Positions 7,991 to 40,177 of a DNA stretch of 64,000 nucleotides are shown here, piece after piece. Numbering within the stretch: position 1 is the first letter of the stretch; every line of letters starts with the position of its first letter. The stretch spans positions 868,001-932,000 of the forward strand of contig CAJFCJ010000008.1 of NCBI GenBank assembly GCA_904063045.1, in the 5' to 3' direction. The stretch comes from Dimorphilus gyrociliatus. Its lineage: Eukaryota > Animalia > Annelida. A model generated the notes under the pieces. The model did no database searches. It worked only from the letters and a program-made list of their open reading frames with translations, and had not been told where the DNA came from. Made by a program: the position numbers and the translations under genes.

Positions 7991-8023
7991 AGAGAGAGAG
8001 AGAGAGAGAGAGAGAGATAAGGA

Positions 8024-8058: not shown

Positions 8059-8059
<1 letters not shown>

Positions 8060-10332: not shown

Positions 10333-13300
10333 ATGGTAAGTTCATTTTCCAAAAGTTTTAAATGCTAATTTTGCAGTTTTTGTCTATAAAAAGTGAATTC
10401 TTTGAATATTTGAAAAGTAATAAATTCTCTAATCATATTAATTTTTACAGGAGTGTGCACCAGTTTGGTTTATAGTTACTATTTCTATGATATGTGGAGG
10501 TATGTTTTCTTTAATCTACTTGCTTTATTCTTTATTCTTCTAACAAAATATTTTTTCAAAATAGCTTATGGACAGTCTGCAGGAAGGGGTTATGATTTGA
10601 TATATTCGACCTGTTACAAGGATGGTGCTATTTGCTATAGTACACCAGGTAAGATGATCAATACTTTTGCTATTACAAGTTCAACCTCTTTTTAGCGATA
10701 TGAATATTAGGGATTAAATTAGCCAATGTTTATTTGCTATGTAGGTCCACCAGGAAGCCCTCCAGCTGCCGGTCCACCAGGACCTACAGGGTCACTAGGA
10801 GGAAGAGGTCCTCAGGGACCACTCGGGGATACTGGACCAGTTGGTAGGCCTGGAGATCCAGGACCTCAAGGACCTACTGGAGATATTGGAGATAAGGGTC
10901 CTGCGGGATATGCTGGGCCTCAAGGTCAACGAGGTCCTCCAGGACCTAATGGTCCAGAAGGTTCCACAGGCTCCCAAGGACCAAGAGGTATATGTTGTTA
11001 TGTTTTGTAAATTAAAGTTTTAATTTAAAAATATCAATTTTCAGGTTTATCTGGCCCTGATGGACCTGCTGGCCCTCAAGGACCTGCCGGTCAGACTGGT
11101 CCTCCTGGAATTGACGGACCTGATGGTTTACCTGGACCGCCAGGCCAACGTGGCCCTCTTGGTGATCAAGGAGAAAAAGGAGAAAAAGGATTTAGAGGGC
11201 AAATTGGGCCAGATGGAGGAATTGGTCAAAGAGGAGATCAAGGAAATAAAGGTTCTAAGGGTTCTTCTGGTCGACAGGGCCCTCCAGGACGTCAAGGTCC
11301 TGAAGGCTCAAGGGGAGATGCCGGACCAATTGGTGACCAAGGTCCTCCTGGCTCACAAGGACTATCAGGAGATAGAGGAGATACTGGTTTTACAGGTCAA
11401 AAAGGAATTAAGGGTGATGCCGGAATATTAGGTCCCAAGGGAGAAATTGGTAATATTGGCTCAAAAGGAGATGTTGGTGCGAAAGGAAAAATTGGAAATG
11501 AAGGTCCAAAAGGTGAAAAAGGACTTAGAGGAGGAAAGGGAGATGCAGGCCCCAAAGGCGACCAAGGCACACCTGGTCTCCAAGGTAGTCGTGGAAATGC
11601 AGGGCCTCAAGGTCCAATTGGTGATCAGGGAGCGACTGGCCCTGAAGGCCAAGCAGGCCTTGGCGGTTCTCCAGGTTTGGCCGGAGCAAAAGGTATTATT
11701 GGAAACACGGGACCAGGAGGGCCACCAGGAAATGATGGTGCGCAAGGGAGGCCTGGATCTAAAGGAGAGGATGGACCTAAAGGCTTACAAGGAGCTGCTG
11801 GTCTTCAAGGAGAACAGGGAAAGAAAGGAACTCAAGGTGTTCAAGGAGTTAAAGGAGATGCAGGTCCTCCAGGAGCCCAAGGTTCACCTGGTGTTAAAGG
11901 AGAAAAAGGTGATATTGGATCCACTGGTCCTAATGGCCTATCAGGCCCAGGTGGACCACAGGGGCTTTCTGGACAAGTAGGGCCACAAGGAGATAAAGGA
12001 CAACCTGGAGCTCGTGGTTCACCTGGACGAGATGGTCGTTCTGGAAGTGCTGGTGATGTTGGACCAGCTGGACCAAAAGGCAAGCATAATTATATATTTA
12101 TACTCTAACAATACTGACAAACAAAATTCTTCTTAGGTGACAAAGGAGCACCAGGAGATCAGGGAACAAAGGGTGCAGATGGAAATAGAGGCCCACAAGG
12201 AGATAAAGGTGATAATGGTCCCATTGGTGACCAAGGAGATATGGGTGATGTAGGTGCACAAGGCCTCGATGGAGATCAAGGAGCTGCAGGAGGTCAAGGG
12301 GTAAAGGGTGAAAAGGGTGACCTTGGACCTGCAGGTGAAAGAGGAAACACTGGAGGTCCTGGAATTCAAGGATTAGCTGGAGATAAAGGTGTAAAAGGCT
12401 TAGTAGGCAAGCCCGGTCCTCTTGGTCCTCCAGGTCCTCTTGGACCTGTAGGAGACAAAGGACTAGCCGGTGCTAAAGGCGGAATTGGACCTCAGGGTGG
12501 TCGTGGAAACCCTGGAGCTGTCGGTGATCCTGGAGCAGCCGGTGATGCCGGAGATGCTGGTCCTATCGGCGCTCAAGGTACCAATATTTTAAAAATATCG
12601 ATCCCGTAACTTTTACATATAAAATTCATAGGTGTCGCTGGTGACGCTGGCTCTGTTGGAAATAAGGGTTCTAAAGGGGATGCTGGTGCTGTTGGTCCTC
12701 CTGGTTCGCCTGGAGCCCCAGGAGATGCTGGACCTGCAGGAGATAAGGGAACGAAAGGAATAAAGGGATCCCTGGGATCACCAGGTGGTCCTGGACAGGC
12801 TGGAAAACCAGGCCCTAAAGGATTAAAGGGTGACATTGGTCCTCAAGGCCTGCAAGGGGCACAAGGGCCGAAAGGACCTGGTGGCCCAGCAGGTAAAGAA
12901 GGTCTTCCAGGAATTGCTGGTAGTGATGGTCCTCCGGGAGAAAAGGGAAGTAAAGGTTCAATTGGTGCCGCTGGACCCGTTGGTCCTCAGGGTTCAAAAG
13001 GAGATGTCGGTGCAACTGGAAACAAAGGACCTCCGGGAGCTGCAGGAAACGATGGTGCTGCGGGAGCTGATGGAATAAAAGGTATTTATCTGAGGTATGA
13101 TAAGATGACATACTAATAATTTATTCTAGGTTCTAAGGGTAATGCTGGTCCTCCTGGAGTTGCGGGTCCTGAAGGAGAAGCTGGACCTAATGGTCCTCCA
13201 GGAAACCAGGGCGTTGTAGGACCACCTGGTCTTCAAGGACTTTCGGGAAATATTGGACCACCAGGAGGTATTGGTAATCCTGGCGTTCCAGGTTAGTAGT

Positions 13301-16300
13301 TACTGGTTGTTTTTAAGGCAAATGTTAATAGTTTAACATTCCTATATAGGCAGTCCAGGTGCTGTTGGTGCTGCTGGAGTTCAAGGTCCAAGAGGACCAC
13401 AAGGGCCTCCCGGTTCAATTGGGCAACCTGGCGATATTGGACCAGTAGGTCCAAATGGAAATAAAGGCCCAAAAGGTTCTCAGGGCCCTAGAGGAGATAA
13501 TGGGGTACAGGGACCAAATGGAATTAAGGGTATTGCTGGACCAAATGGTGATATAGGAGCACAAGGTGCTAGAGGAGGAATTGGTCCTATTGGCCCATTG
13601 GGAGACAAGGGAGTAGCAGGACCTCCAGGACAAGAAGGACCTAAAGGAGATGTTGGAAATGCTGGTCCAATGGGACCAGATGGACAAGTCGGTCCGAAAG
13701 GTGCCAAAGGTGGTGTTGGAGATCAAGGCCCTAAGGGAAAACAAGGTACTCAAGGCGGTGTTGGTCAACAAGGAAAGAAGGGAGAACTTGGAGCTGCTGG
13801 GCCTTTGGGACCTCAAGGAGACAAGGGGGTCGTTGGAATAAAGGGAATTGTGGGACAGAAAGGTTTAGTTGGTGATCAGGGTATTAGAGGAGTGCCAGGA
13901 GTCCTTGGTCCGAAAGGTTCCAAGGGTGCCAAAGGTGGTCAAGGTGCCCAGGGTCAACCTGGTAATCAAGGTGCTCAAGGAGCTCAAGGTGTTATTGGAA
14001 ACACAGGAGCATCTGGACCAGAAGGGTTAACTGGTTTAGATGGGCCGCCTGGCCCCCCTGGTGCTCAAGGTTTACCAGGACCACAAGGGTCAGTAGGACC
14101 AAGGGGTGATACTGGACCTGATGGTATCATTGGTAGACTTGGCCCACAGGGAAGTATCGGTGCCCCAGGTCTAAAAGGACCTAAAGGTGATCAAGGAAAC
14201 CCCGGACAGGCAGGTGTCCAAGGAGATTCAGGACCACAGGGTCTTAAAGGAGATGTGGGAGATCAAGGAATAGCTGGACCAGCTGGCGAAAAAGGAGCCA
14301 AAGGTTAGTCAGCTTAAATCCTACAAAATCAATAATCTGTTATTTTTTACAAGGCGTCAAGGGTGAAGTTGGAAGTCAAGGTGCTACTGGTATGCAGGGA
14401 CAAATTGGTATAGATGGACAGCAGGGTGCTCAAGGCGCTAAAGGATTAGCTGGAGGCGAGGGTCCCAAAGGTTATGTCGGTAGATCAGGACCAACAGGTC
14501 CTCAAGGAAATAAGGTAACATTGTAGATTCTTAAACAACGAAAAGATTATAATTTTCGGGTTTCAATATATAAATAGCTTCAATTATATAAATAGACTAC
14601 CATAGTATTTATAATTTCAATTTCATGCAGGGTACCAAAGGGCAGCCAGGATCTAATGGTATTTCTGGAGATGTAGGACCTCAGGGTCCACAAGGACCTA
14701 AAGGAGCAAAGGGTGTGGCTGGACCTGCTGGAGCCACTGGAGATCCAGGCTTGCCAGGCAATTCTGGTCCTCAGGGAGGTGTTGGCAACAAAGGTAATAT
14801 TGGAATCAAAGGAATCAAAGGTCAAAGGGGACGAGCAGGAGAGCGCGGTGATTCAGGTAAGTTGCGCTATAGACGATAGACTTTGACTGTAACCGACATC
14901 CCACATCATAGGCGACCAGGGAGCTACAGGTGATCAAGGTTTGTCTGGATTAGCTGGTGCACAAGGTCCAGTTGGACCAGCTGGGCCAGATGGTGATACT
15001 GGAGACGCTGGAGAGATCGGTAACAAAGGTAGCAGAGGATTACCTGGTCCAGAAGGTGTTGTCGGCCCTAAAGGCATTGCAGGTGACAATGGAGGTGCAG
15101 GACCGCAAGGACCACAAGGGGCAAGAGGAGATCCTGGAGAAGCGGGTCCGATTGGATCAACTGGAGCGCCTGGTGAACCAGGCGTACAAGGAAGAATTGG
15201 ACCAGTTGGACTACGGGGTGATTCCGGTAAATCTGGACAACCTGGACCGGCAGGATCTGCTGGTCCCAGAGGTATTATATAAATTTTTACTGAGAAAACA
15301 CTAATTTACACACCGATCATTTATAGGATTACCTGGAGTACAAGGACCTCAAGGAGGAAAAGGAATCAAGGGTATTAGAGGGCCGAAAGGACGCCAAGGA
15401 GAAGAAGGACCACGCGGAAACGATGGTCCGGAAGGTTCACGAGGTGCCCAAGGAGAAAGTGGGCCTCCAGGAGCCCGAGGTGGTCAAGGTCCTAGAGGTG
15501 ATACTGGTGATATTGGTCCTGCAGGAGAAAAAGGTGATGATGGCTTAGTGGGATTGGATGGCCCAATAGGTAGAGTTGGTGATCGTGGTCCTAGAGGTCC
15601 AGATGGACCTAGAGGCCCAGACGGTAGGCCCGGTAGTATCGGCTTACGAGGACAGATTGGAAATCCTGGTAAAAAAGGAGCAAAAGGACCCCAAGGCGAT
15701 CCTGGAGATCCAGGTCAGCCAGGCCCAGATGGACAGCAGGGTGGAACTGGATACACAGGCCGTTCTGGTGTTGGTGGATCTGTTGGTCAACAGGGAGTTA
15801 TTGGTGGAACTGGAAACGAAGGTCCCGTAGGCCCCCGAGGTTTACAGGGAGCTCCAGGACCCCAAGGTCCGCCTGGTGCAACCGGTCCTAGAGGTGATGC
15901 AGGTGTTGCTGGTTTACAAGGTTGGTTGAGAAATTATATCTCTCTGTATTATAAACGAAATTCAAAATTCTAGGTTCTCCTGGAAACCAAGGACCTCCAG
16001 GTCCCACGGGTCCTGTAGGCGAAATTGGAGACTTAGGTCTTCCTGGACCAAAAGGAGCCAGGGGAGATGCAGGTTTTCCAGGTTTACCTGGAGAACAGGG
16101 TCCAGCTGCATCTGGAGCTGGAAGACCAGGTCCCGTCGGCTCTCCTGGTCTACCAGGTCCTCTGGGAGTTGATGAGTGTTTGGTAAACAATGGAGGTTGT
16201 CAACACGTTTGTGTCAATACATATGATGGATACTGCTGTATGTGTAACGAAGGATTCCAACTTGTGCCGGTTGCCCAAGAAGTGACGAACTGTGTTATTC

Positions 16301-17065
16301 AAGATGTTACTTGCAGAGAAACCCAAACGGCAGCGAGACAATGTTTCTGTCAGCTAAGAGACGCAAACGGAAATCCAACGAGACAACTTCCAATTAATGG
16401 AACAACATGCACTGATATTGATGAATGTTCAAATTCAAATGGTCTATGCGAACACAATTGCCAAAATACAAGAGGATCATACCAGTGCACTTGCAATCAA
16501 GGTTTTGCGTTGCATCCAAACAAAAAAGACTGTCAAGGTAAGGAGTGTTTGATAATTAAAATATTTTCTAAATTGACAAACGCGTGTCTTGAAAACTTCA
16601 GATGTTGATGAATGTGCTACGCCAAATATTTGTGGATCAAACAAAGTCTGCTCAAACACATTAGGAGGCTACCTCTGTGGCGATAGCAGTTTGTACCAAA
16701 GTAAATTGAACAACAATTTTTCATGACTATGTTTTTCTTTCTGCACAGATATTCTAATCCGAAGAGTCGCTGCTGCTGCTGCTGCAGCAAGAGAAGATGA
16801 TCAAGAAGATGAAGATGCCAGCTCAACAGTTTCATCTACCTCTTCAACGACAACTGTCCTAGCAGCTGTTCTAAGCGGCTTGTTGGCAGTCATTTTCACT
16901 GTAATAATTGTCATAGCCTATGGAACTTGGAAGAAACGTAAGAGCCGTGGCACAGGTGATGTAGAGACTTCATCCAGTCATAGTGCTAAAACGCTCGCTT
17001 CGAGTCGCCTAAATCTGGGAATATTCGGAGGTGATTCAACCGAACGACCTGCTCATTTCGTATAA
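10333..17065 (+). CDS. Collagen A: type I transmembrane EGF-collagen, about 1913 aa
   Basis: ATG at 10333 followed directly by an intron; signal peptide [21 protein letters not shown]; CYKDGAIC cap; Gly-X-Y exons 10745-16164; EGF units 16165-16700; [25 protein letters not shown] then KKRK; stop 17065. All introns frame-consistent. Confidence 0.9.
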
Positions 17066-17762
17066 TAATAAATAGATGAAAAGAAATCAGAGGAAAAAGA
17101 AACAACCTTTTTTTCCTCCTTTATAAAGCAAGAATATCAATAAATCTACATTTTATCTAGAGGAAAAAAGCCTTTTCGGTTTTTTTTTAACTTCCGGATT
17201 TTAGGTTCCTTTTTATGTGCAATCGAACTTAGTTAATTAAAAAAAATGAAGCCTAAGAATTTGTGTTGCTTTCATGTTTTTTTTCCAGCCTGAAGAATGT
17301 GCTTATTTTTTTCTTTGAATGAAAGAGTTTCGTAATAAAATGTAAACAATAGTGTGTAAAACTACCTTGTTTATGTCTGGCGTTTATGTATAAGTGTATT
17401 AGCATAAATGATATACAACGTTTACTTAGTTGGAAAAATAAAATAGAACAAAAGTAATAAAAATTTTGATGATTCCATTTAAAAGAGAATTTATTACTTT
17501 TAATATAAACTGAATAATCTTATCTTTTCTTTATGTATATGAAAAAAAACATTAATTACCAGTTAATTAGCTAAAGTCGGGAAAGAGATATTTTGTCTAA
17601 GTTCCACTCAAATATGATAAAAAAGATGGAGGAGGATAAGATAAACGAAAAAAACATTGCACATTCTTTCTTTTTTAAAAACAAAAATGTCTCTTTATTT
17701 AAATGTTTATGTATGCGAATTAACCCGTCTTCTCGGGTTTTCCAACCTCCTAAGCTTTATTT

Positions 17763-20700
17763 CTATGTAAAAGTTGGCGGCCGTACTGTCGTATGACGTT
17801 TTGAGAAAGTTCCATCAGAACCCACTGATGAGATAACAGATTCTGCATCGCTTGATTCTGTTGAAGTTTTCTGCCATCTCTTTCGGACAAGAACCACAGC
17901 TAAAGTTAAAAGGGCACAGCCAGCAGCTGAGAGCAATGAAGCTAAGATAACTGTATTGGTAGACGACGATGATGAGGCAATTACTTGACCAGGATTACCT
18001 CCCTGTGCAGCAGCCCTTGCCTGATTAGATGATCTAAACTCAAGGTCACCTAAAAAATTAAATTTTATTAGTAAAAGTTAGTTTGAGTAGATAAGACATA
18101 CCTTCGCTATGACAGAAATATGCTCCATATGTATTGACACAAGTTGAGAATCCTTGTCTCAGACATATTTGAGTGTCTTCGCATTCATTCACATCCACAC
18201 AAGATCTACCATTCGCGCTCAATCTAAATCCTCTTCTAGTATCACAAGAGCACGTGAAACTACCAACAGTGTTGGTGCATTGGTCCTCACAAGGTTTTCC
18301 TTCATCGCATTCATTTATATCTAAAAATAAATAGTTATTCTATAAGAATAAGTCTTTTTGGAAACAATTTGAATTGATTACCTTCGCATTTATATCCAGT
18401 TACTTGGAGAATATTTGAGGTTCCTTCTTGAGTACATTGACAAGATCTTTGATTATTAATATAACTGCATCGAACTGTTCCAGCTTTACAAGAGGCAGCG
18501 CCTTGAGGAGTGGGGATAAGGCGATAACCAGGTCTACAAAGACAGCAGTATCCGTCGTAAGTATCATAACAGATATGTTCACATCCATGATTGTCGTTCA
18601 AGCATTCGTTAACTCCTGTTAATTTTAAATGTTCTATACATGAACCTATTATTGAGAAATATATAATTACCGAAGTATCCAGGTGATCCTCTTGGTCCCA
18701 TTGGACCTGGTGGTCCAATTTCTGAGCCTGGCGGACCTCGGGGGCCCTGTTGACCATTTGGCCCTCTTCTTCCTTTGTTCCCAGCCGGACCTTGAGGGCC
18801 TTGTGGGCCTTTTTGTCCAGGATCTCCTGGTGGACCTGGAGGTCCATCTATGCCTTTCTCGCCATTAAGTCCAGCTGGACCTGAGGGGCCAACTGGACCA
18901 GCATCTCCGGCTTCTCCTGGTGGACCGTCTGGTCCATCTTCTCCTCTTGATCCTGCTTGTCCTGTATAACCTTGCATTCCTGTAGCTCCTTGTTGTCCAA
19001 CGAGACCGCCAGTACCGTCTTGACCCTGAGAACCTCGTGGTCCAGTTGCTCCTTGCATGCCAAATGGCCCATTTGGACCTTTGTCTCCGACACCCCCAGA
19101 CAAACCATCAGGACCTGGAGCACCTTTACTTCCTTGTTGTCCTATATCTCCAGCCTGCCCAATCCTTCCAGGTAAGCCTTGTGAACCCATGGGACCAGTG
19201 GAACCTTGAGGACCTTGTAATCCCGTTCGGCCGCGGCGACCTTGTGGTCCTTTAGGACCTTGTAGGCCAGTTGCACCCTTGGCTCCCTTTGAACCAACTG
19301 GACCGGGTGATCCAGCAGGACCTGTCGCACCCGGAGAACCAGCTCCTCCTGGTAAGCCGTCAGGTCCAGCATCTCCAGGATCACCAAGTTCTCCTTGATC
19401 ACCTGCAATTCCTTGAGGTCCTTGTAAACCAACAGGACCTTGTGGTCCTCTGACACCTTGTGGCCCTTCATCACCCTGAGGTCCTGGGGGACCATCGGGT
19501 CCTTCTGCTCCTTTTTCGCCCACTGGACCAGTTGGTCCTATAAGAACATTTTTTGATATTTTATTGCTTGAGAAAACTAAAACTACAAGTGACTTTACCT
19601 TGCAGACCAGGCAATCCCTTGTCACCATCTAAACCAGGTAAACCTGTCGCTCCCTGTTCACCTTGAGGTCCTTGAGGACCAGGATTACCAGCTTGTCCAA
19701 CCAAACCTTTAGCGCCTTGAATACCAGTGGCACCTTGTGACCCTCTAGAACCAGTATTACCAGGGGGTCCTTTCATTCCCGGATAACCTTTCGGGCCTTT
19801 ATCTCCAACGGCCCCGATTGGCCCAACAACTCCGGGCTGACCAACAGAACCATCTGGTCCCTTTTCTCCAACGACTCCTTTTGCGCCCTTTATTCCCCTA
19901 GCACCATCTTGGCCTCTTGCTCCTTGAGCTCCTTGTGGGCCTTGAGCTCCTATTTGTCCTTCACCACCGAGAGGCCCTTTGTCACCAGCAGGGCCCTTAA
20001 GACCGGGATCTCCTTGAGGACCATCTTGTCCGACTTGACCTTCTGGTCCAGCCGTTCCGATCGGACCTGGAATAACGTAAAAATAAAGTAAGTTTATATG
20101 TTCAGAAACAACGCTTTTTAGTTTACCTTTCGGTCCGGTTGCTCCAAGTAAACCTGTTTGGCCAGCAGGACCAGGATCACCGATTGGCCCAATACCACCT
20201 ACAGCACCACGATTACCAACAGGTCCGGTTATACCAGTGTCACCAACAGGTCCCAAAACTCCTTGTTCACCAGTGTTACCTACGGGTCCTGGATCTCCAG
20301 TTGCTCCAATACCTCCTTGTATTCCTATATTTTCAATGTTCCATATAAATTTCTTAGTATCTTAATAAGACAAAACTCACCAATGTCGCCTGTATCTCCA
20401 GGTAAACCTACAGCTCCCTGGACTCCTTTAACTCCAGGTTGTCCTGCATCACCGATTGGGCCTTTAGGACCTCTCGGCCCATCTACTCCTTTCTGTCCTT
20501 TATCTCCCTGAGGTCCAGCATCTCCTGTATTTCCTTCTAATCCTGGAGGTCCTCTCTGGCCAACTTGGCCAGGAGCACCTTTTCCGCCAGTTGTACCAAC
20601 AGCTCCCACAGGTCCATCACCGCCAGCAACACCTGGTGCTCCTTTTGATCCTCTAGGACCAGGTGCTCCTTCTGCTCCATCTAAACCAGTCGATCCAGTC

Positions 20701-23700: not shown

Positions 23701-24754
23701 GCACCAGGGGGTCCGTCTTGGCCTTTTCCACCTAATAATTTGAGCATAGTCAAAAACCTATCTTATAATGAAAAAATTTCGCATTTACCAGGTGGGCCAT
23801 CTGCTCCCGCATTGCCACTTAATCCTGGTCTTCCTCTGTTTCCTTGGCGACCAGGTGGACCTGCTTGACCGTCTGGACCTTTGGCACCTTGTTCCCCTGC
23901 TGGTCCTTGTTGACCAGGTGCTCCAGGTTGGCCTATTATGCGTATAATAATTCGATTATCATTGAAGGATAAAAATAATAGACTTAATTTCTACCTGGGT
24001 TACCAAGAGGTCCTTCATTTCCCGCTATTCCTTGAGGGCCTCTATCTCCAGGAGGCCCGTTTAATCCTTTAGGACCTACAGGACCTTCAGGTCCTGATGT
24101 GCCTATCGGTCCGTCTCTACCTCTAGGACCGCCTGGTCCCTTAGGGCCTTTTGCTCCATTAGGTCCTGGGTCTCCAACTGGCCCCCTTCCTCCAGGTGGA
24201 CCCTGGATTCCAGGAGGCCCATCAGGTCCCCCTGTTCCTGGTGGACCAGGAGGTCCAGGGGGTCCTGGACGAGTATTTACTCCTATGAAAAGAAATTTGC
24301 GTAAGATAAAATAGTTTTAGGAAAAACGAAAGTTACCAGATCCTTCAAAGCAAACACCTCCTTCGTTATTACATCTGACATTAACGCCATTAGATTCTTG
24401 TCCGCTTCCTATAATTCAAATGAATTAATGTAATCAAAAAGTGTTTGTAAAATTAGCATATTCATAAAGGAAAACTAGCAAACCTGTTTGTAAAATATAT
24501 ATCACAACTATCCAGGACGCTGCGACTCTACCAAAACGGCGCGCCTAAAAAAGGAATAACAAAGGTTTATTTAATAAAAAGTTCGATGTAGTTAAGCCAG
24601 ACATATTATATATCTATTGCTATGTTTAACTACAAATACCAGGCATTAACCTTTGAATTAATCAAATATCATTGGTTTAAATAAACAAATTAATTGAACA
24701 ATTTGTTTTTGTCATATAACATTAACTATACAAGATAATAGCACTTACCATCAT
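17763..24754 (-). CDS. Collagen B: type I transmembrane EGF-collagen
   Basis: ATGATG at 24754-24749 then intron; signal peptide [26 protein letters not shown]; CNNEGGVC cap; Gly-X-Y 24282-18672; EGF units; [24 protein letters not shown] then RKR; ends PPTFT* at 17763. Confidence 0.9.
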
Positions 24755-31400: not shown

Positions 31401-32274
31401 GAATACCATTAGGACCTTTTATTCCAGTTGGTCCTTTCGGTCCTATACTTCCAATGTCCCCAGGTTGACCAGCTGAGCCTGGTGGACCTACAAAAAATAT
31501 CAATTAAGAAAATTAATAAATTGTCATATTGCATATAATCATGAAATTCTGGTTCAAGTAGATTACCTTGCTGACCGTCAGCACCAGCTGGCCCTTTATC
31601 ACCAGGATCGCCAACCATTCCTTGTGGACCTCTTGGTCCTTGTAAACCAGGGGAACCATTTTGACCTACACCTCCTTTATTTCCAGTAGCTCCCTGAGAT
31701 CCACGAGGACCAGGATTTCCTTGTCGCCCAATATTTCCTACTGGACCTTGAGGTCCAACTGGGCCTTTGGGACCAGGTTTTCCAAAGTTACCAGAACGAC
31801 CAGGAGGTCCTGTTCCACCTGGATTCCCTTGGTCACCTGGGGGACCTTCTCGTCCCTCCGGACCTGCAGGTCCGGGTGGGCCCTGATTGCCTTTGGGGCC
31901 GATAACACCTCTTGGACCGATTCGGCCAGGAGATCCGGAAGAGCCGGTCGCACCTGGAAGACCTGCTGGCCCCGGTGGCCCAGGAACTCCTCTCAGACCT
32001 TGAAATAGAAATCAGTACTTATTGAAAATAATTTATTTTATTTAGGTGATTACCCGTTCCTTCCATACACAGACCGCCTTCCTTACATTCTGTATTTTGA
32101 TCACCTCCAACACCTCTGGCGGAATTCTGACAAAATGCTACAATAATAATAAAAGAAGAAAATTAAACGAGAGGTAACACAAAAGAAAGATTTGTTTGTA
32201 GAAGAAATTAGCATACCTTTGCTAACGAACAGCAAAAAAATAACAATCGGTAAAACGCTGAGCCTTTTTTCCAT
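25417..32274 (-). CDS. Collagen C: type I transmembrane EGF-collagen
   Basis: Signal peptide [23 protein letters not shown]; CKEGGLC cap; Gly-X-Y 31998-26309; EGF units; [22 protein letters not shown] then RHIIKKRRK; stop 25417. Confidence 0.9.
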
Positions 32275-33247
32275 CTGATATCAATAGAAATTATGAAATA
32301 ACACTGCAGTCGAATATGAAAAGTATTAGTTGTAAAATGAAATCGAAGTTATATTCTATAACATGTCTTCTCTTTAATACTTGGTTTTTTTTTAACATAC
32401 CAATATAACTTATAATAAATTGAATGAAAATAAAGGCTTTTCTATATTTTAATTGATAATTTTTGTTCTAATGCTTACCTTTAGTTTATTATAAGGCTAT
32501 GCAGCGTTAAAATTTCCTTCAATCCTGCCCTGGGAACGTTACTGCCCAGCTGCAGAGATGGAAAATTTTTTATAATTGTCCGCCTTAAAGCATATACAGC
32601 ACAAGCACAGTCCTTAGAGCGGCGCTGTCCTCCACAGTTGACTGCACTTTGAATCCTTATGATTAAAAAATGATCCGAAAGAGCTGTCTGATCTTTCATA
32701 CCGTCTCCAACGCTAACACTTTTACCGCCACGCGTTTTTAGAGCGGTTTATTTTGAAATACTTTTATTAAACTTTTTATGCTAACTCCCTGCACTTGCTT
32801 TCCCAATAAGAAATTACCATAGAAACATATGCAAATTAATTAATAAAAATTAATTCAATAGCTAAAATCTCGCTTAAAGATTTTAAAACTAAATAATATC
32901 TGTATTTATAAAGCATTTATTTTCAACTACTCCCCCTAGTGCGAAAATCAAATTCAACCAAGCTGAACACTCAAAGTGGATGTGGTAAAATCAACGTCCT
33001 ATATGCTTTTCTGTGACACCGAATAGTTTTCTCCAGAGATAGTGTGAGTGAGAGGGTTAGTAAAGTTTTCGTATGATCATTTCAACTTACTATCTTCAAT
33101 TACAAATTAAAGATAGTTTAAAGAAAATAATGCAGTGTTATAGCAATATTGCACAGTTGTAACAAAACAATTTGCAAAGTTACTCTAATGGCATTTTATT
33201 TATTTATTTAAAAACGATTATTTAATCATTACTATTCAAACAGGGCA
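32275..33247. promoter_or_regulatory. Bidirectional promoter / 5' leader region shared by collagens C and D
   Basis: Head-to-head ATGs 973 bp apart. Each start codon lies just downstream of an acceptor (C: TCAG/ATG; D: ACAG/GGCAATG) with upstream donors near 32478 (-) and 33045 (+), implying 5' UTR exons and a core of a few hundred bp. Confidence 0.6.
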
Positions 33248-36200
33248 ATGCTGAAGGTCCTTGCACTATTTTACATTTTCTCTGGAGTAAACTGGAGTAA
33301 GTATCTTATTTTTCCTTTAACGTTTTATCAATTCTTGTAGTAACGCATTTATATGCAAATATCTGCATATATGCTTTATCATCTTTTAAATATATTGATA
33401 ATTTTAAACCATCTTATTTATCGAATATCGTATTTATTGACCAAAATAAAAGAAATTTTGACAACTTTATTGATGTTCTCATAGTTTTACAAAAAAGAAC
33501 TTTTTCTTCTTTAGGTCTGGCTTTTTTTCTTGTGAAATTTTTTTTACAGCCTTTTTTTATATACAATTTTTAATATTCTTTTTTTAAACCAATAGTTTAC
33601 GCTCAGCAAAATGTTGGGGAAGGGCGAGGCGGTGACCAGACTGTAAAATGCAAAAAAGGAGGATTTTGTTATGATGGCACAGGTAGTCTATCAGACATTT
33701 ACCCTTTTAAACTCTTTCATCTATATTTTTCTTCACGATAATTTTCAGGCCAAAGAGGAGCTCCAGGTTTACCAGGGCCTGTGGGACCCCCAGGGGAGAC
33801 TGGTCCTGTAGGGGATAGAGGTATCGTAGGGCAAAAGGGTGTTCTTGGACCTAAAGGAGACAATGGCCCTCCAGGTAATTAATTACTCAAAAACAAACCC
33901 AATACACTGAAACATACGATTTTATTCTGTAGGTCCAGACGGAAACTATGGACCACAAGGTCCAGTAGGAGATACTGGTCCTCCTGGTTTTACGGGATCT
34001 GCAGGTCCACCAGGCCAGAGAGGTCCAATTGGATCTAAAGGCCCCCGTGGTATTCAAGGAGATAGGGGAAGAATAGGTCTAGCAGGTTTGGCTGGACCTG
34101 GTGGTCCCCAGGGGCCAGCTGGTAAAAAAGGTACCAAAGGAGTTGCTGGAGGACCTGGAGATTTCGGTCCACCAGGCTTACCTGGGGAAGACGGAGACAG
34201 GGGTGATAGAGGCCCTGTAGGAAATACAGGATTAGAAGGTATACATTTATTTTTCAGATATTAGATTTACGCTTTCTTAAAATTATGAAAAGGTCCAAGA
34301 GGGTTACCAGGCGATCGTGGGAGTAATGGTGATAAAGGTCCCCAAGGAGCTGAAGGCATTAAAGGAGCTCCTGGATCTCAAGGAGTGGCAGGAGAGTCTG
34401 GTCCTGTTGGGGAAAAGGGGACTAACGGTACAGATGGTCTACCAGGTGCAATTGGAAGAGATGGACCAGTAGGAGATAAAGGAGATCGCGGCCCACAGGT
34501 AAAAATACTTTGTTCATTTTTATAGTCAATAAAAAAAGGTATTTTAGGGGAAAATAGGAGAAAAAGGCCTCAAAGGATTACTGGGCTCTACAGGACCAAA
34601 GGGAGATAATGGCCCAAAAGGAATTATTGGTATGAAAGGAGAAAAGGGTTTCCGTGGTCCTTTAGGCGAACCAGGATCAGTCGGTAATCCAGGAATTGAT
34701 GGTCAACAAGGATTTAATGGGGGTCAGGGGTTACAAGGTTCAACAGGAGATACTGGGGGTATAGGACCCAAAGGAAACCCTGGTCCTGTTGGTAGTCAAG
34801 GATTACAAGGTGATTCTGGACCCGTTGGTCCAGCCGGGCCAAAGGGTTTACCTGGGAGCACAGGTGTACAAGGACCAGGAGGCAGTCCAGGACCACAAGG
34901 GGATAAAGGAGAAAAAGGTTTTCCTTAATCTGGCAAAGTTTCTGTTACTAATTGATTTTTGAACTCTAGGTTCTGTTGGTCTTCGTGGCATACCAGGAAA
35001 TATAGGAGTAATCGGTCTTAAAGGAAGTAATGGAAACCCTGGTATAAATGGACTGTCCGGCCCTGGAGGTGATCCAGGTGAAATAGGACCTCAGGGCAGT
35101 ACAGGACCTGAAGGAGATCCGGGAGTACCTGGTGTTAAAGGTTCAGCCGGAGGGCTTGGCGATACAGGTGATATTGGTCTAGATGGACCAATGGGAAAAA
35201 ATGGAACGATTGGTCCTGACGGAGATACTGGACCAAGAGGTACATTTTTGTCAACTATGATTCTTAATTTAACTATTTATATTAAATTCAGGTCCTGTCG
35301 GCGATGTTGGGGATCGAGGAAGTAAAGGGCCCGTAGGTAGTAAAGGACCACAGGGATTTGATGGATTAAAAGGAGATGCAGGAGAAAGGGGGTTTACAGG
35401 GCCGGACGGTCCTAAAGGACCAGTAGGCAAAGCTGGCGCTCAAGGTCTTCAAGGTAATAGAGGGAATGCTGGTGATGTTGGTGACACAGGCCCGCCAGGA
35501 GAAATCGGTTTAGTTGGAGGGCTAGGAGCAACTGGAGAAAAAGGACCTATTGGAGATCCCGGGGAGGCAGGAGTACCTGGTGGAAAGGGAATGAATGGAG
35601 AACCTGGACCAGACGGGCCGCAAGGCGATGCAGGTCAACTTGGTGAAAAGGGTGTTATAGGTCCAAAAGGAGATCAAGGATCCACAGGTCCTGCTGGAGC
35701 CATTGGAGTAGAAGGTGCTAAAGGCAACAAAGGGCCTCTTGGTCAGCAAGGAGTCATGGGAGATTTTGGACAACCTGGAGATAAAGGTGATATCGGTAGT
35801 AATGGTCTGCCTGGCAATAAGGGACAAGTTGGCGCCGCCGGACCAGCCGGGCCTATAGGAGATATTGGATCTCCTGGCGATGCAGGACCCGATGGATCAA
35901 TAGGATTAGATGGACGACAGGGTTCACCTGGAGACGCAGGAGGACCAGGTCCCCCCGGAATTCAAGGAGTTAAAGGCGTGAGAGGAGACTTTGGTTCTCG
36001 AGGAAATCCCGGTCCTGCAGGACCAAATGGTAATATAGGCCAAAATGGTCGTGTTGGCGATGTTGGTGATGTTGGAGTTGCTGGAGCTAAGGGAGCTCTA
36101 GGATCTGCTGGAGAAAAGGGAGCTGATGGGCCCATTGGTAACCCTGGAATCAATGGTGTTCAAGGACCTCGCGGTAAGCCAGGTCCAATTGGAGATCAAG

Positions 36201-39200
36201 GTGATACTGGGTTAGCAGGTGTAGATGGTGTAGTGGGGCCTTTGGGACCTCAAGGGCCTCAGGGAATTCCAGGGCTTGTAGGAGGTGTTGGTTTGGCAGG
36301 TCTACCAGGACTGCAAGGGCCAAGAGTAAGATCTGATAGTCCGTTTTAAGGAATCTTACTAATATTCCTCTTTTCAGGGTGATACTGGTGCTTCCGGAGC
36401 TCCTGGTCAATCAGGAGGCCAAGGCATACAAGGTGCCCAAGGTCAACCTGGGAGCGATGGACCCATGGGATCAACGGGTGTAAGAGGTCCTGTAGGGCCT
36501 GTTGGGTCTCAAGGTAGTAAAGGCTCAAATGGTGATTCTGGACCAAGAGGTATAAAAGGTATTCAAGGAAATGTTGGTTCTCCTGGAGATTCAGGTCCAA
36601 AAGGGCCGGCTGGTAATAAAGGGTTAAAGGGTCAACCAGGACAACAAGGATCTAGTGGAAGAAAAGGAGATATCGGAAATCCTGTATGATTCTTAATTTT
36701 TCTTGTCTTTTGTATTCATGTTTAACTGAGAAATTTTTTATTAGGGACCAAAAGGGCTTCAAGGTGAAAAGGGAGTTGGCAATCTAGTAGGAAAAACAGG
36801 TCCCCAGGGAAATCCGGGCGATATTGGAACTAAAGGACAGAAAGGTCAGAGAGGAGATAAAGGCTTACCAGGTAATGTGGGATCGAGAGGCGACACTGGT
36901 GGCCAAGGACCTGATGGACCTCTTGGCATTAAGGGTTTACGGGGTGATGAAGGTGGTGTTGGCGACAAGGGCCCTGTTGGAGAAAAAGGATCTCTTGGCC
37001 CATTAGGGCTTCCTGGAAAAAGGTAAAAAACTTTTTTTTGCATCAAAGTTTAATGTGTATTTATGTTTTTCAGAGGTCAACAAGGAGATGTAGGAGATCA
37101 AGGGGTTCTAGGGCCTGCAGGTAACAAAGGCAGCCCGGGGATTTCTGGAATCCCAGGAGTAAGAGGTTATACCGGACAACACGGGCCAGCTGGACCTAAT
37201 GGAAGAGCTGGACCTGCCGGTCCTGTTGGTTCTCAAGGTAATACTGGCGCACCAGGTAATGTGGGAGATAAAGGGCCACCAGGAAATACTGGAGCACCTG
37301 GACCACAAGGTCCTAAAGGCATTTCAGGTCCTATAGGCCCTTTAGGTGACCAAGGAGCTGTTGGGTCGAAGGGAAGTATAGGAAGTAAAGGTCAATCAGG
37401 TATACAAGGAGTAAATGGTGAAGCTGGGTATACTGGTTCTACTGGTCAAAAAGGTTCACGAGGTAATAAAATTCTGTTGGCATTAGCGAAAATATTTATA
37501 AATTTTTCTTATTTAGGTGATCAAGGGCCTGTTGGGGAAAGGGGTCCTAATGGCAATATTGGTCCACAAGGTTTTACTGGTAATACTGGGTCAAAAGGTA
37601 TTCAAGGATTAGTTGGTCAAAAAGGAAGCCAAGGACTTGTTGGAGAACCTGGCTCAAAAGGTCCTCAAGGTCCTCAGGGTAATCAAGGAGATGTCGGACC
37701 AATTGGAAATCCTGGGCAACAGGGCCGACCAGGAGGACCTGGTTTGCGAGGAAATACTGGTGATAGAGGAGATATTGGAATAACTGGAGCGAAAGGACCA
37801 ATTGGTAACAGAGGTCTGCCAGGCAGTCAAGTAAGCTTTATAGTCAAGAGATCATTTTCTTTCATTTTAATTATTTTGTATTTCTTTTAATCGACTTTAG
37901 GGAGATCCAGGAGAACAAGGAGACTCTGGTGGAATTGGAGATCCTGGTGACCCTGGTCCTAATGGAGAGGCAGGAAAACAGGGTCCTCAGGGCAGCCAAG
38001 GAGCAACAGGAAATACTGGTGTTCAGGGCAGAACAGGATTCACTGGTGCACAAGGATCCAGAGGCTCTCCTGGTGCTACGGGGGGAAGAGGTCCTGACGG
38101 AGATATTGGAGAAGACGGCATTGTTGGACCTCAAGGACCAGCTGGTGATAGAGGCAGAGACGGCTCAAAAGGCTCTGTTGGTCTTAAAGGAGAAATTGGT
38201 GTCATTGGTGGCCGAGGCCCTGCTGGTTCTAGAGGTCCACTGGGGAACACAGGAAATCCAGGCCCTGTTGGGCTCAAAGGAGATCAAGGACCTATCGGAC
38301 CGGAGGGTCCCCCTGGTGATACAGGGCCTATTGGAAGAGAGGGGTTAGTAGGAAGATCAGGAGTACCTGGTGTTCAAGGTGACATCGGGGGTACAGGTTT
38401 TCAAGGAGAAAAAGGAAGAGTGGGACCTCGAGGTTTTATAGGCCCACTTGGTGCTACAGGAGAAAGAGGCATCAAAGGAATAATTGGTTTACAAGGATTA
38501 AAGGGTCAAATTGGTGCTCGAGGTCAAAGAGGACCTGCTGGAATAAAGGGCAATGATGGTCAAAACGGTGGGTTAGGAAATCCTGGCCGAGAGGGGCAGG
38601 TTGGTCCGCCTGGTTTAATAGGACCACAAGGTAAAAAATGATAAATAAATATTATCTTAAATATTCTTACGAATATTTTGAAGGCTTTACTGGACCGAAA
38701 GGACGCGCTGGTCCGAGAGGTGTGAGAGGAAATAGAGGTTCTGTCGGCGACAAAGGAGATGCTGGAAATCCAGGGCAAGCAGGGCCGATAGGAAATCCGG
38801 GAAGTCCTGGAGTTCTAGGAGTTCGCGGGCCACCTGGACCACAAGGATTTACAGGTTCTAATGGTCCTGTTGGGGCGACTGGTGGAACAGGTGGAACAGG
38901 GAACACAGGTCTTACTGGCCTTCCTGGATTACATGGTCCCAGAGGATCTATTGGACCAAAAGGCGATGCTGGTCGCCCTGGAGATACTGGCTCCGTTGGG
39001 CCTCTTGGTAATAATCTTTATCTTATTGATATCACTCCAGTCGATAGAATTTAATTTAGATATTTCATCACTCAGGTTCTAGAGGGTCACCGGGTTCTAA
39101 CGGAGCTCGAGGACCAACAGGACAGAGGGGAGAACCTGGAGACGATGGAGAAGAGGGTCCAATGGGTAAGCAAGGTCCAGCTGGAGACCCAGGAGGTCAG

Positions 39201-40177
39201 CCGGGTCCTGTCGGCCCTCCGGGTCCACCTGGATTTTTTGGGGCAAATGAGTGCCTAGTTAACAACGGCGGTTGCGATCATGTATGTATGGATACTTCAG
39301 ATGGATACTGCTGTCTTTGTCGTCCGGGTTATAACTTAATCCCAGTTCCTATTACGGATACAACTTGTTCGAGTTCGTACAAACAAATAAGTAAATAACT
39401 ATTTTATCAATAAAAATAATACTTAACAACAGTTGATTCTGTATCCTGCTCCTACATCGGATCGCAAAGAGTATGTACATGTACAGATACATCAAATCAA
39501 ATAGTTGTCATTAGTGGGACGCGTTGTAGAGGTAATATATTTTTTGTAAAATATTTCTATGTTAAAGTTAATCTTTAATATCATCAGACGTGGACGAATG
39601 TCGCCTCGGAAGCCATAACTGTGATCAATACTGCTTTAATACTGTTGGGTCTTTTACTTGTGGTTGTAGGCAAGGTTTCGAATTGAGCACTGATCTAAGA
39701 ACTTGTGACGGTAAAGAGATAAACCTTTGCTTCTTATATATAGAGACATGCAATTAAATCTCTCAATCTCCGTTTACAGATGTAAATGAATGCGAAAAAT
39801 CGGCCTCAGCCTGTGATCAAGGGAGAACTTGCGTTAATACTTATGGTTCTTATTTCTGTTTTGGTTTGTATTCTGTCTTGGCCATTTTTATTAGTATTAA
39901 GTATTTTATTCACTAATTTTTACTTATATCATAATCGTATTTAGGTGGTGGGATTGCTCAAGGACCACCAGTTGCTGCAAGTCAGAAAGGAAAAAATCCG
40001 AATCAAAATGGAATGCCTGTTGAGAATGGAAGTGGAAACACAATTACAATTGTCTGTCTTTCTGTCGTAACTGCGTTACTTCTATGTGGGGTGATTGCGA
40101 TTGGAGTTCGAAAATTCATCCTAAGACGTCGTAATTTGGGAGATGTCGAAACGGATAGCAGCTCGTCTGCTTTTTAA
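33248..40177 (+). CDS. Collagen D: type I transmembrane EGF-collagen
   Basis: Signal peptide [20 protein letters not shown]; CKKGGFC cap; Gly-X-Y 33749-39239; EGF units 39240-39864; [24 protein letters not shown] then RKFILRRR; ends [11 protein letters not shown] at 40177. Confidence 0.9.

What the first reader, a model, noticed from the sequence alone, without database searches (positions are those of the whole stretch)
10333..40177. Cluster of four type I transmembrane EGF-collagens: a collagen class I do not recognise
Seen: four paralogs with an N-terminal signal peptide, CX5-6C cap, about 535 Gly-X-Y triplets, three EGF-like units, a Ser/Thr linker, one TM helix followed by a basic stop-transfer cluster, and a short cytoplasmic tail (roughly 25-45 aa). 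Established: vertebrate transmembrane collagens (XIII, XVII, XXIII, XXV, gliomedin, EDA, scavenger receptor A) are type II with an N-terminal TM. Fibrillar and type IV collagens end in COLFI or C4 domains, and CCBE1 is secreted with EGF N-terminal to short collagen segments. None fits. Inference: a C-terminally anchored procollagen that trimerises at the membrane, zips C-to-N and projects or sheds a rod of about 460 nm (1606 residues x about 0.286 nm, vs 1014 residues/300 nm for type I). It could be the building block of an epidermal cuticle or other cell-surface fibre.
Basis: partly seen in the sequence, partly recalled or inferred. Interest (0 to 1): 0.95.

Follow-up and report, generated by a model that had tools for sequence, protein, structure and literature searches.

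The report
Membrane-anchored EGF-collagen gene cluster, annelid
Four neighbouring genes of the tiny marine worm Dimorphilus gyrociliatus encode very long collagens (about 460 nm) that end in EGF modules and a membrane anchor, an arrangement opposite to all well-known membrane collagens and related to the little-studied "EGF-collagens" reported from the brachiopod Lingula.

Summary
The window is Dimorphilus gyrociliatus (Annelida), GCA_904063045.1. I built four complete gene models (1904, 1898, 1888 and 1874 aa; 16-20 exons). Each has:
- a signal peptide and a C-x5/6-C cap;
- 529-536 Gly-X-Y triplets;
- EGF-like modules, one C-terminal TM helix with a basic cluster, and a 22-44 aa tail.

RNA contigs from two runs carry my predicted splice joints for gene 1, including those joining collagen exons to EGF exons. 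A related species keeps the gene under purifying selection. Four marine metatranscriptome contig families show the same C-terminal layout; two of them carry paired furin-type sites.

The claim of a wholly unrecognised class is only partly right. Luo et al. 2015 (PMC4595640) described a "new group" of Lingula shell and mantle collagens that lack COLFI and combine with the same Pfam families (EGF_CA, FXa_inhibition, cEGF). About 20 such genes occur in Lingula and 6-7 in pearl oyster. That paper never mentions a membrane anchor, and I found no paper describing type I topology.

Function (cuticle, other matrix, or retained surface rod) remains inferred.

The scan flagged other type I membrane collagens (MAM-headed, mini) elsewhere in this genome, but not this cluster.

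The parts
10333..17065 (+). g1: 16 exons, 1904 aa. Exons: 10333-10335, 10451-10499, 10565-10648, 10745-10987, 11045-12052, 12137-12577, 12632-13081, 13130-13291, 13350-14303, 14354-14514, 14631-14856, 14912-15271, 15327-15920, 15974-16537, 16602-16700, 16749-17065
   Evidence: Model. Ten splice joints from 12577/12632 onward are seen in RNA contigs. The ortholog in a relative has identity by codon position of 83/90/48%.
17763..24754 (-). g2: 19 exons, 1898 aa
   Evidence: Three 30-nt loose ends of RNA contigs match g2 exactly.
25417..32274 (-). g3: 20 exons, 1888 aa
   Evidence: No direct transcript evidence was obtained here.
33248..40177 (+). g4: 19 exons, 1874 aa. The first exon (33248-33296) and the donor at 39372 are the least certain points.
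   Evidence: One RNA loose end matches g4 exactly.
10771..16173 (+). g1 triple-helix coding span, introns included: 529 Gly-X-Y triplets with one 4-aa break (ASGA) 6 triplets before the end
18608..24265 (-). g2 triple-helix coding span: 534 triplets, 1-aa break 6 triplets before the end
26300..32054 (-). g3 triple-helix coding span: 536 triplets, 1-aa break 5 triplets before the end
33682..39248 (+). g4 triple-helix coding span: 535 triplets, one internal NLV break plus the conserved C-terminal 1-aa break
16168..16855 (+). g1 non-collagenous ectodomain: EGF-A (FXa_inhibition type, with an extra Cys in a CC doublet), a 4-Cys module, EGF_CA, a truncated EGF_CA, then an Ala/acidic/Ser-Thr linker
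   Evidence: Pfam. PDB sequence matches to LDL-receptor EGF-A/B and thrombomodulin EGFs.
17952..18613 (-). g2 non-collagenous ectodomain (same module order)
25591..26305 (-). g3 non-collagenous ectodomain (same module order)
39243..40042 (+). g4 non-collagenous ectodomain (same module order)
16856..16930 (+). g1 predicted TM helix, followed by KKRKSR and a 44-aa tail
17886..17951 (-). g2 predicted TM helix, followed by RKRWQK and a 40-aa tail
25531..25590 (-). g3 predicted TM helix, followed by [11 protein letters not shown] and a 37-aa tail
40043..40108 (+). g4 predicted TM helix, followed by RKFILRRR and a 22-aa tail
32275..33247 (.). 973-bp divergent intergenic region between g3 and g4, the most similar pair (52% identity). 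It is a candidate shared promoter. A 20-nt element (TGCAGTGTTAT...) lies upstream of both starts in matching orientation.
   Evidence: That it acts as a promoter is inference.

Best explanation
The cluster encodes four alpha-chain paralogs of a lophotrochozoan 'EGF-collagen' made as a type I membrane protein. The module order is: cleavable signal peptide; short two-Cys cap; a rod of about 1600 residues (about 460 nm) that is almost unbroken; a conserved small kink 5-6 triplets from its end; four EGF-type modules; a linker; one TM helix; and a short Ser-rich tail.

Proposed mechanism, all inferred. The EGF/TM end holds three chains together in the ER membrane and takes the place of the missing COLFI propeptide. 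The Pro-rich last triplets nucleate the helix, which zips C to N. The N-terminal Cys pair locks the far end.

The equal helix lengths, the conserved position of the break and the head-to-head g3/g4 pair suggest that the paralogs co-assemble, as heterotrimers or in one polymer.

The product is an abundant structural matrix collagen, delivered while still anchored. Most likely it is then clipped from its anchor to join an extracellular network. I put cuticle/apical matrix and sub-epidermal matrix at roughly equal odds.

Shown: gene structure, domain content, splicing, transcription, conservation, and relatives with the same layout.

Inferred: topology, trimerisation, folding direction, shedding, location.
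For: Genes and transcripts:
- All four ORFs are complete and share one architecture.
- Pfam finds Collagen plus FXa_inhibition/EGF_CA/cEGF, and no COLFI, C4, C1q or VWA in the C-terminal exons.
- RNA contigs carry the predicted joints at high depth. They also hold exact g2 and g4 sequence.

Conservation:
- The ortholog in a related species shows 83/90/48% identity at codon positions 1/2/3. Its introns cannot be aligned.
- The paralogs are old: 43-52% identity overall and 15-27% at non-Gly helix positions. Yet helix length (529-536 triplets) and break position are kept.

Relatives:
- Stop-free transcripts L002, L003-L006 and L007 show the same order: helix, small break, 6-7 triplets, VNEC-EGF, 4-Cys module, two EGF_CA, linker, TM, basic cluster, Ser-rich tail.
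- L003 and P0201 carry RKKR plus RSKR/RVKR between EGF-A and the 4-Cys module. This fits convertase release of the rod.

Literature:
- Lingula EGF-collagens occur in the shell matrix proteome and mantle. They lack COLFI and are tandemly duplicated (PMC4595640).
- Precedent for membrane-anchored precursors of apical-matrix collagens: about two thirds of C. elegans cuticle collagens are predicted type II TM proteins with furin sites (PMC11304992).
- Pro is commoner at X (23-32%) than at Y (14-18%). The same bias is seen in the giant alvinellid and earthworm collagens (PMC12403961).
Against: - No localisation, protein or topology data exist.
- The four Dimorphilus proteins have no R-x-K/R-R site. 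Shedding here would need another protease, or does not happen.
- No obvious trimerisation module such as a coiled coil is present, and EGF modules are not known to trimerise collagens.
- The metatranscriptome relatives have Pro Y >= X. The X bias is therefore not a family trait and is weak as a cuticle signature.
- Annelid cuticle collagens measured in larger worms are 0.9-2.5 um long, several times longer than 460 nm. From memory, dinophilid cuticles are described as lacking the orthogonal fibre layers.
- Another first-stage note flags a Gly-X-Thr collagen in this genome as a cuticle candidate (s1-082306, untested).
- Homology to the Lingula group rests on shared Pfam content and gene organisation only. 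I could not align the sequences.
Confidence: 0.55

Rival explanations
1. The proteins stay anchored. They would be cell-surface collagen rods used for adhesion, spacing or matrix capture. This is like collagens XIII and XVII or thrombomodulin/CD93-type stalks with a collagen head, rather than precursors of a secreted fibre.
For: - There is no furin-type site in any of the four Dimorphilus proteins.
- The cytoplasmic tails keep short shared motifs, such as GDVET-SSS in g1 and g4 and FNSL-SKF in L002 and L007. This suggests the tail matters after synthesis.
- The EGF / Ser-Thr linker / TM / short tail half resembles thrombomodulin and CD93 in sequence searches.
- First-stage notes report several other type I membrane collagens in this genome (s1-080684, s1-081566, s1-082091; untested).
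Against: - A nearly unbroken 460-nm helix, kept equal in length across four old paralogs, is typical of polymer-forming structural collagens. Known membrane collagens have short, interrupted helices.
- RNA depth is very high.
- Two relatives have paired convertase sites that would release the rod.
- Lingula EGF-collagens are found in an extracellular shell matrix (PMC4595640).
Confidence: 0.25
2. They are the worm's main internal (sub-epidermal or interstitial) fibril or network collagen. They would replace or supplement COLFI-type fibrillar collagens, and the EGF/TM end would serve only as a removable C-propeptide.
For: - The helix is long, almost uninterrupted and Cys-free, with many K, R, D and E residues and RGD motifs (11 in g1, 8 in g4).
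- There is no COLFI domain.
- Lingula authors classed their EGF-collagens with fibrillar collagens.
- Expression is high.
Against: - The helix is about 1600 residues, not the roughly 1014 of fibrillar collagens.
- Exons are multiples of 9 bp with phase-1 introns that split the Gly codon, not the 54-bp phase-0 pattern.
- There are no telopeptides or N-propeptide.
- I could not test whether this genome also holds COLFI collagens.
Confidence: 0.3
3. It is an artefact. On this reading the collagen exons and the EGF/TM exons belong to different genes, or the array is a misassembled low-complexity repeat.
For: - The public gene table, as indexed by the tool, shows no gene over g1 or g2.
- Collagen DNA is prone to misassembly.
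Against: - RNA contigs from independent runs bridge collagen and EGF exons with exact GT..AG joints.
- Four divergent copies keep the same full layout with open frames.
- An orthologous contig from another species shows the same exon order under purifying selection.
- There are no tandem arrays.
- Unrelated metatranscriptome contigs read straight through from helix to TM without stops.
Confidence: 0.01

Closest known systems
Lingula anatina 'EGF domain-containing fibrillar collagens' (Luo et al. 2015, Nat Commun 6:8301; PMC4595640)
   Same: Both are long collagens without COLFI that combine with EGF, EGF_CA, FXa_inhibition and cEGF Pfam modules. Both are tandemly duplicated genes of a lophotrochozoan and are highly expressed in a matrix-secreting tissue. 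The same combination was counted in pearl oyster (6-7 genes).
   Different: The paper does not mention a transmembrane segment or topology (0 occurrences in the main text). It treats the combination as a Lingula-lineage domain shuffle tied to shell formation. Here the host is a shell-less annelid. I could not align sequences, so orthology is untested.
Giant annelid cuticle-type collagens (7,700-8,900 aa predictions in alvinellids and Eisenia; PMC12403961)
   Same: Both are annelid proteins with very long, near-continuous Gly-X-Y runs in which Pro is commoner at X than at Y.
   Different: They are about five times longer. Their terminal domains are not described in the paper, so an EGF/TM end is unknown. 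Location of the Dimorphilus proteins in the cuticle is not shown.
MACIT and other vertebrate membrane collagens (XIII, XVII, XXIII, XXV, colmedins, class A scavenger receptors); C. elegans col-99
   Same: Both are collagens tethered by one TM helix. Ectodomain shedding by convertases is known for that group and is suggested here by furin sites in two relatives.
   Different: Those are type II proteins with an N-terminal signal anchor, interrupted and much shorter helices, coiled-coil nucleation and N-to-C folding. Here there is a cleavable signal peptide, a C-terminal anchor and a nearly unbroken 1600-residue helix.
C. elegans cuticle collagens (about two thirds predicted type II TM with RxxR sites; PMC11304992)
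   Same: The concept is the same: an apical-matrix collagen made as a membrane-anchored precursor and released by a furin-type protease.
   Different: Topology is opposite. Those proteins are tiny (<350 aa), with interrupted helices and Cys clusters flanking the helices, and they have no EGF modules.
CCBE1 (collagen and calcium-binding EGF domains 1)
   Same: It has Collagen plus EGF_CA/cEGF Pfam content. It is the nearest Atlas cluster by language-model features (0.91 for the 187-aa exon, 0.79 for the 555-aa relative).
   Different: It is secreted, has no TM, places the EGF modules N-terminal to two short collagen segments, and is 300-430 aa long.
Thrombomodulin / CD93 family stalk and LDL-receptor EGF-A/B pair
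   Same: The membrane-proximal half has the order EGF modules, Ser/Thr-rich linker, TM, short tail. EGF-A reads like LDLR EGF-A (NECLDNNGGCSHVC...).
   Different: Those proteins carry C-type lectin or LDL-A heads, not a collagen helix.

Membership tests
Lophotrochozoan EGF-collagens (Lingula group, Luo et al. 2015) | Collagen triple-helix repeats combined with EGF / EGF_CA / FXa_inhibition / cEGF modules | tested here: met
   Pfam finds Collagen, FXa_inhibition, EGF_CA and cEGF above or near the cut-offs in the C-terminal exons of g1-g4 and in L003.
Lophotrochozoan EGF-collagens (Lingula group, Luo et al. 2015) | No COLFI C-propeptide | tested here: met
   No COLFI hit in any C-terminal exon. 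The ORFs run from the helix through the EGF modules and TM to the stop.
Lophotrochozoan EGF-collagens (Lingula group, Luo et al. 2015) | Sequence homology of the non-collagenous region to the Lingula proteins, with the same domain order | not testable with these tools
Lingula sequences were never retrieved.
Type II membrane collagens (MACITs, XVII, colmedins, SR-A) | N-terminal cytosolic domain and signal-anchor TM, with the collagen C-terminal to the anchor | tested here: not met
   The N-terminus is a short hydrophobic leader followed by Q and the cap. The only strong hydrophobic 19-mer lies at residues ~1832-1860, followed by a K/R cluster.
Type II membrane collagens (MACITs, XVII, colmedins, SR-A) | Multiple interruptions of the helix | tested here: not met
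   There are one or two short breaks in ~1600 residues.
Fibrillar collagens (clades A/B/C) | COLFI C-propeptide | tested here: not met
Fibrillar collagens (clades A/B/C) | Major helix of about 338 uninterrupted triplets, with exons based on 54 bp that start with a whole Gly codon | tested here: not met
   There are 529-536 triplets. Exons are multiples of 9 bp, up to 1034 bp long. Nearly all introns are phase 1 and split the Gly codon.
Collagen IV | C4 (NC1) domains and a 7S region, with many interruptions | tested here: not met
   No C4 hit, and the helix is nearly continuous.
CCBE1 | Secreted protein with EGF modules N-terminal to two short collagen segments and no TM | tested here: not met
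   The order is reversed, a TM is present and the helix is ~1600 residues. The Atlas similarity is compositional only.
Annelid cuticle collagen | Extracted from the cuticle; very long molecule (0.9-2.5 um) | not testable with these tools
   No localisation data. The predicted rod is about 460 nm (1591-1609 residues x 0.286 nm), shorter than published cuticle collagens.
Annelid cuticle collagen | Imino acid bias toward the X position (earthworm and alvinellid giant collagens) | tested here: met
   Pro at X is 23-32% against 14-18% at Y in g1-g4. Compare G-P-Y 33-40% against G-X-P 21-33% in PMC12403961 Table 1. The metatranscriptome relatives do not share the bias.
Nematode cuticle collagens | Small proteins (<350 aa) with interrupted helices flanked by conserved Cys clusters and an RxxR site near the N-terminus | tested here: not met
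   The proteins are 1874-1904 aa and have no R-x-K/R-R site.

The most novel reading that the evidence does not exclude
C-terminally anchored EGF-collagens form a lophotrochozoan-wide collagen class. On this reading the Lingula shell collagens, pearl-oyster EGF-collagens and annelid cuticle collagens are all members. An EGF/TM module replaces the COLFI propeptide as the chain-registration device. Anchoring in the epidermal (microvillar) membrane positions the rods before release, and so templates the ordered apical fibre layers of annelid cuticle and brachiopod shell matrix.
Probability: 0.2. Interest if true: 0.8.

Novelty: new variant of a known kind. Interest (0 to 1): 0.6.

Why it matters
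Textbook collagen biology holds two rules. Membrane collagens are type II and fold N to C. Long fibre-forming collagens use a soluble C-propeptide to select and register chains.

A family of 460-nm, nearly unbroken collagens tethered by a C-terminal anchor would be a third solution. It would make the folding-direction and chain-selection questions testable in a new system.

It also extends the Lingula EGF-collagens beyond brachiopod biomineralisation to a shell-less annelid. That argues against a Lingula-specific domain shuffle.

It offers candidate genes for the poorly known molecular basis of spiralian apical matrices.

Practically, the genes seem to be missing from the public gene table of this genome as the tool indexes it. 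Proteome-based surveys would therefore overlook them.

Tried and rejected
1. Whole-library HMMER search with the 123-aa EGF region. It was swamped by multi-EGF proteins such as fibrillin, and yielded only one true relative fragment (P0096).
2. Word-indexed protein searches. The 0.55-1.75x length filter keeps full-length ~1900-aa proteins out of reach, because no stop-free reference longer than 359 aa exists in the window. These searches did recover P0154, P0169 and P0201, which led to the spliced metatranscriptome contigs. Everything else was generic (SCUBE, MEGF6, fibulin, CD93).
3. ESM Atlas searches. Only CCBE1-type clusters came up, at scores of 0.91 (187-aa exon) and 0.79 (555-aa relative). 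I rejected these as compositional look-alikes.
4. Rfam on the window: nothing.
5. Literature searches for type I or C-terminal TM collagens, and for rotifer, annelid-cuticle and Brachionus collagens: no description of this topology. The Lingula paper surfaced only in the last search.
6. I first guessed a rotifer or placozoan from base composition and the coral metatranscriptome hit. I dropped this once an exact look-up placed the window in GCA_904063045.1, Dimorphilus gyrociliatus.
8. Repeat search in the upstream regions gave only one weak shared 20-nt element between g3 and g4.
Full report
WHAT IS THERE

The window is AT-rich animal DNA (about 30% GC). Four islands of about 6 kb stand out at 45-50% GC, with strong strand-specific GC skew. 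Six-frame translation shows dense Gly-X-Y reading frames in these islands on the strands + - - +.

A splice-aware dynamic programme rewards Gly at every third codon and allows GT..AG introns. It gave 12-15 helix exons per gene with 48-160 bp introns. I joined the N- and C-terminal exons by hand from three-frame displays. I then checked that each complete model is one open frame:

- g1: 10333-17065 (+), 16 exons, 1904 aa
- g2: 17763-24754 (-), 19 exons, 1898 aa
- g3: 25417-32274 (-), 20 exons, 1888 aa
- g4: 33248-40177 (+), 19 exons, 1874 aa

ANATOMY

All four genes share one plan.

- N-terminus. A hydrophobic leader has small residues at -3/-1 and a Gln at the predicted mature N-terminus. About 15 residues follow, holding two Cys spaced by 5 or 6 residues.
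- Helix. There are 529, 534, 536 and 535 Gly-X-Y triplets without Cys. A break of 1-4 residues sits exactly 5-6 triplets before the end of the helix in every copy. The final triplets are Pro-rich, and three copies end in an F-F-G or Y-F-G junction.
- Non-collagenous ectodomain. First comes an EGF module of the FXa_inhibition/LDL-receptor EGF-A type. A 4-Cys module follows that no Pfam model recognises. Then come a calcium-binding EGF and a truncated calcium-binding EGF (Pfam; PDB sequence matches).
- Anchor. A linker is followed by one strongly hydrophobic segment (Kyte-Doolittle 2.3-3.0 over 19 residues), then a Lys/Arg cluster and a Ser-rich tail of 22-44 residues.

At 0.286 nm per residue the helix would be about 455-460 nm long.

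The paralogs are old: 43-52% identical overall and only 15-27% at non-Gly helix positions. Helix length and break position are nevertheless conserved. g3 and g4 are the closest pair and lie head to head, 973 bp apart. Nearly all introns are phase 1 and split the Gly codon, and helix exons are multiples of 9 bp. The coding DNA contains no long tandem arrays. It is therefore neither a recent internal amplification nor a collapsed repeat.

IS IT TRANSCRIBED AND SPLICED AS MODELLED?

Public runs hold the sequence. Laying contigs of four runs on 11101-17100 showed the following.

- Run X5 has no recorded library type but behaves as a transcriptome. Its word depth is about 1000-1600.
- X5 and X6 (a coral metatranscriptome) both carry spliced contigs whose joints coincide with my g1 introns.
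- These include 15918>15972 and 16535>16600, which join collagen exons to the EGF exons. A third run also shows 16535>16600.
- The final joint into the TM exon was not among the joints printed. It is implied by the lengths of the contigs (1987 and 2158 nt) and the even depth up to 17100.
- Loose ends of these contigs match g2 exactly at three places and g4 at one. At least three of the four genes are therefore expressed.
- Other loose ends match nothing in the window. They point to further collagen paralogs elsewhere.

WHOSE GENOME, AND IS THE GENE CONSERVED?

An exact look-up of a neighbouring 180-aa single-exon gene placed the window in GCA_904063045.1, contig CAJFCJ010000008.1 (window position = record position minus 866000). 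A paper identifies this assembly as Dimorphilus gyrociliatus, a miniature dinophilid annelid. The genome paper reports a median intron size of 66 bp and no trans-splicing. It does not mention collagen or cuticle.

In the tool's copy of that record's gene table, the 10 kb following the 180-aa gene carries no gene, although it holds all of g1 and part of g2. The tool warns that absence from its index is not proof. It does suggest that these collagens are missing from the public proteome.

A genomic contig from another sample (L001) is the ortholog of g1. It has the same exon order. Identity at codon positions 1/2/3 is 83/90/48%, and the introns cannot be aligned. This indicates clear purifying selection.

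RELATIVES

The protein searches were badly hampered. The exhaustive search was swamped by multi-EGF proteins. The indexed search only considers proteins of 0.55-1.75 times the query length, which excludes full-length collagens.

They did yield three short ORFs (P0154, P0169, P0201) whose contigs are stop-free transcripts from marine metatranscriptomes (L002, L003-L006, L007). These read straight through in this order: helix; a two-residue break; 6-7 triplets; G-VNEC EGF; 4-Cys module ending in a conserved (I/V)NGT-C; two calcium-binding EGFs; linker; TM; basic cluster; Ser-rich tail. The layout is therefore a family trait, not a peculiarity of one genome.

In a tree of the non-collagenous region, the four Dimorphilus genes fall on one side and the three metatranscriptome sequences on the other. 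The tree is unrooted and its branches are long.

Two of the relatives carry an insert between EGF-A and the 4-Cys module, bounded by RKKR and RSKR/RVKR. Paired proprotein-convertase sites at that position would free the rod plus EGF-A from the anchored stub. The Dimorphilus proteins and L002 lack the insert, and they have no R-x-K/R-R motif anywhere.

One Dimorphilus-specific detail is an extra Cys (a CC doublet) in EGF-A. It gives the ectodomain an odd number of Cys and could form an inter-chain or inter-molecule bond (inference).

WHAT IS KNOWN

None of the vertebrate classes fits, as the membership table sets out.

The closest published match is in the Lingula genome paper (PMC4595640). [quoted passage not shown] The figure legend lists EGF, EGF_CA and FXa_inhibition, and some of the genes are tandem duplicates. 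The domain co-occurrence table counts EGF_CA 22, FXa_inhibition 20 and cEGF 19 with Collagen in Lingula, and 7, 6 and 6 in pearl oyster. MAM also combines with Collagen in oysters.

That paper attributes the combination to domain shuffling in the Lingula lineage. It never mentions a transmembrane segment. The Pfam content and tandem organisation match what I see here. I could not retrieve Lingula sequences to test homology or domain order.

The Alvinella genome paper (PMC12403961) reports 7,700-8,900-aa collagens in alvinellids and an earthworm, with Pro more frequent at X than at Y. The Dimorphilus genes share that bias (23-32% against 14-18%), but the metatranscriptome relatives do not. That paper does not describe the terminal domains.

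A mechanistic precedent comes from C. elegans (PMC11304992). About two thirds of its cuticle collagens are predicted type II membrane proteins with furin sites. That review also restates that fibrillar collagens fold C to N and membrane collagens N to C.

HOW IT MOST LIKELY WORKS

Established by the data: gene structure, domain content, splicing, transcription, selection, and family-wide layout. Everything below is inference.

- Topology. A cleavable leader, plus a single C-terminal hydrophobic segment followed by a positive cluster, predicts type I topology with the whole collagen outside the cell.
- Registration. With no COLFI, C4, C1q or coiled coil, the only candidates for bringing three chains into register are the EGF array and the TM segment, helped by confinement to the ER membrane.
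- Folding direction. The helix is most Pro-rich next to that end. This is where fibrillar collagens nucleate, so C-to-N zipping is the natural reading. The N-terminal Cys pair would act as a terminal lock.
- Co-assembly. Conserved equal helix lengths in four old paralogs and the head-to-head g3/g4 pair recall collagen IV gene pairs and suggest co-assembly.
- The break. The conserved small break about 5 nm from the helix end could be a hinge or a protease entry point.
- Release. Whether the rod is released is open. Furin sites in two relatives and the presence of Lingula EGF-collagens in an extracellular shell matrix argue for release. The absence of such sites in Dimorphilus and the conserved tail motifs argue for at least a long anchored phase.
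- Location. This is unknown. I rate apical/cuticular and sub-epidermal matrix as about equally likely. An annelid's epidermis secretes a collagenous cuticle. But published cuticle collagens are far longer, and dinophilid cuticles are, from memory, poor in fibres. Another first-stage note proposes a different cuticle candidate in this genome.

VERDICT

It is not a collagen class that nobody has seen, because EGF-collagens were reported from Lingula in 2015. The C-terminal membrane anchor, the predicted reversed topology, the conserved near-terminal break, the furin-site variants and the presence in annelids are, as far as I could find, undescribed.

I class it as a new variant of a known kind, with interest 0.6.

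Noticed in passing
window 10544-21348 (L010 10544-20543): The gene table of GCA_904063045.1, as indexed by the look-up tool, lists the neighbours (GDPD, STEEP1, Acatn, HECT_2 and the 180-aa gene). It lists no gene over g1 or the 3' half of g2. The collagens may be unannotated in the public record.
   Followed up: partly
L003 about 1000-1060; P0201 residues 43-70: Two metatranscriptome relatives carry an insert bounded by RKKR and RSKR/RVKR between EGF-A and the 4-Cys module. The Dimorphilus genes and L002 lack it. This is a likely convertase-release cassette that is present or absent among family members.
   Followed up: partly
window 16233-16238 (g1) and the matching positions in g2-g4: All four Dimorphilus paralogs have a CC doublet in EGF-A (GYCCMC / GYCCLC / GFCCLC), where the relatives have Y-C. 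This gives 21 Cys in the ectodomain, an odd number.
   Followed up: no
loose ends at window 14066, 15364, 15587 and others: Several RNA-contig loose ends encode Gly-X-Y sequence that matches nothing in this window. This implies further expressed collagen paralogs elsewhere in the genome.
   Followed up: no
window 10333-10341: In g1 the start codon is the last three bases of exon 1 (ATG|GTAAGT). g2 similarly has ATGATG|GTAAGT. The first intron therefore interrupts the signal peptide right at its start.
   Followed up: no
window 39372-39432: g4 has two in-frame donors for the intron after EGF-A: GTTCGT at 39373 (62-nt intron, matches g3) or GTAAAT about 21 nt downstream (about 41-nt intron, adds SSYKQI-type residues). 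No transcript data were obtained to decide between them.
   Followed up: no
window 48000-58750 (-), 61068-61541 (-), 40936-42174 (+), 2234-4047 (-): Flanking genes: a large multi-exon gene that I read, without a test, as an IP3/ryanodine-receptor type channel; an ORF that looks MORN-repeat-like (not tested); a 413-aa ORF with a weak Rrn7/TAF1B cyclin-domain hit; and an acetyl-CoA transporter (Acatn).
   Followed up: partly
window 7990-8090: A (GA)n/(TA)n microsatellite tract lies in the intergenic region upstream of the 180-aa gene.
   Followed up: no
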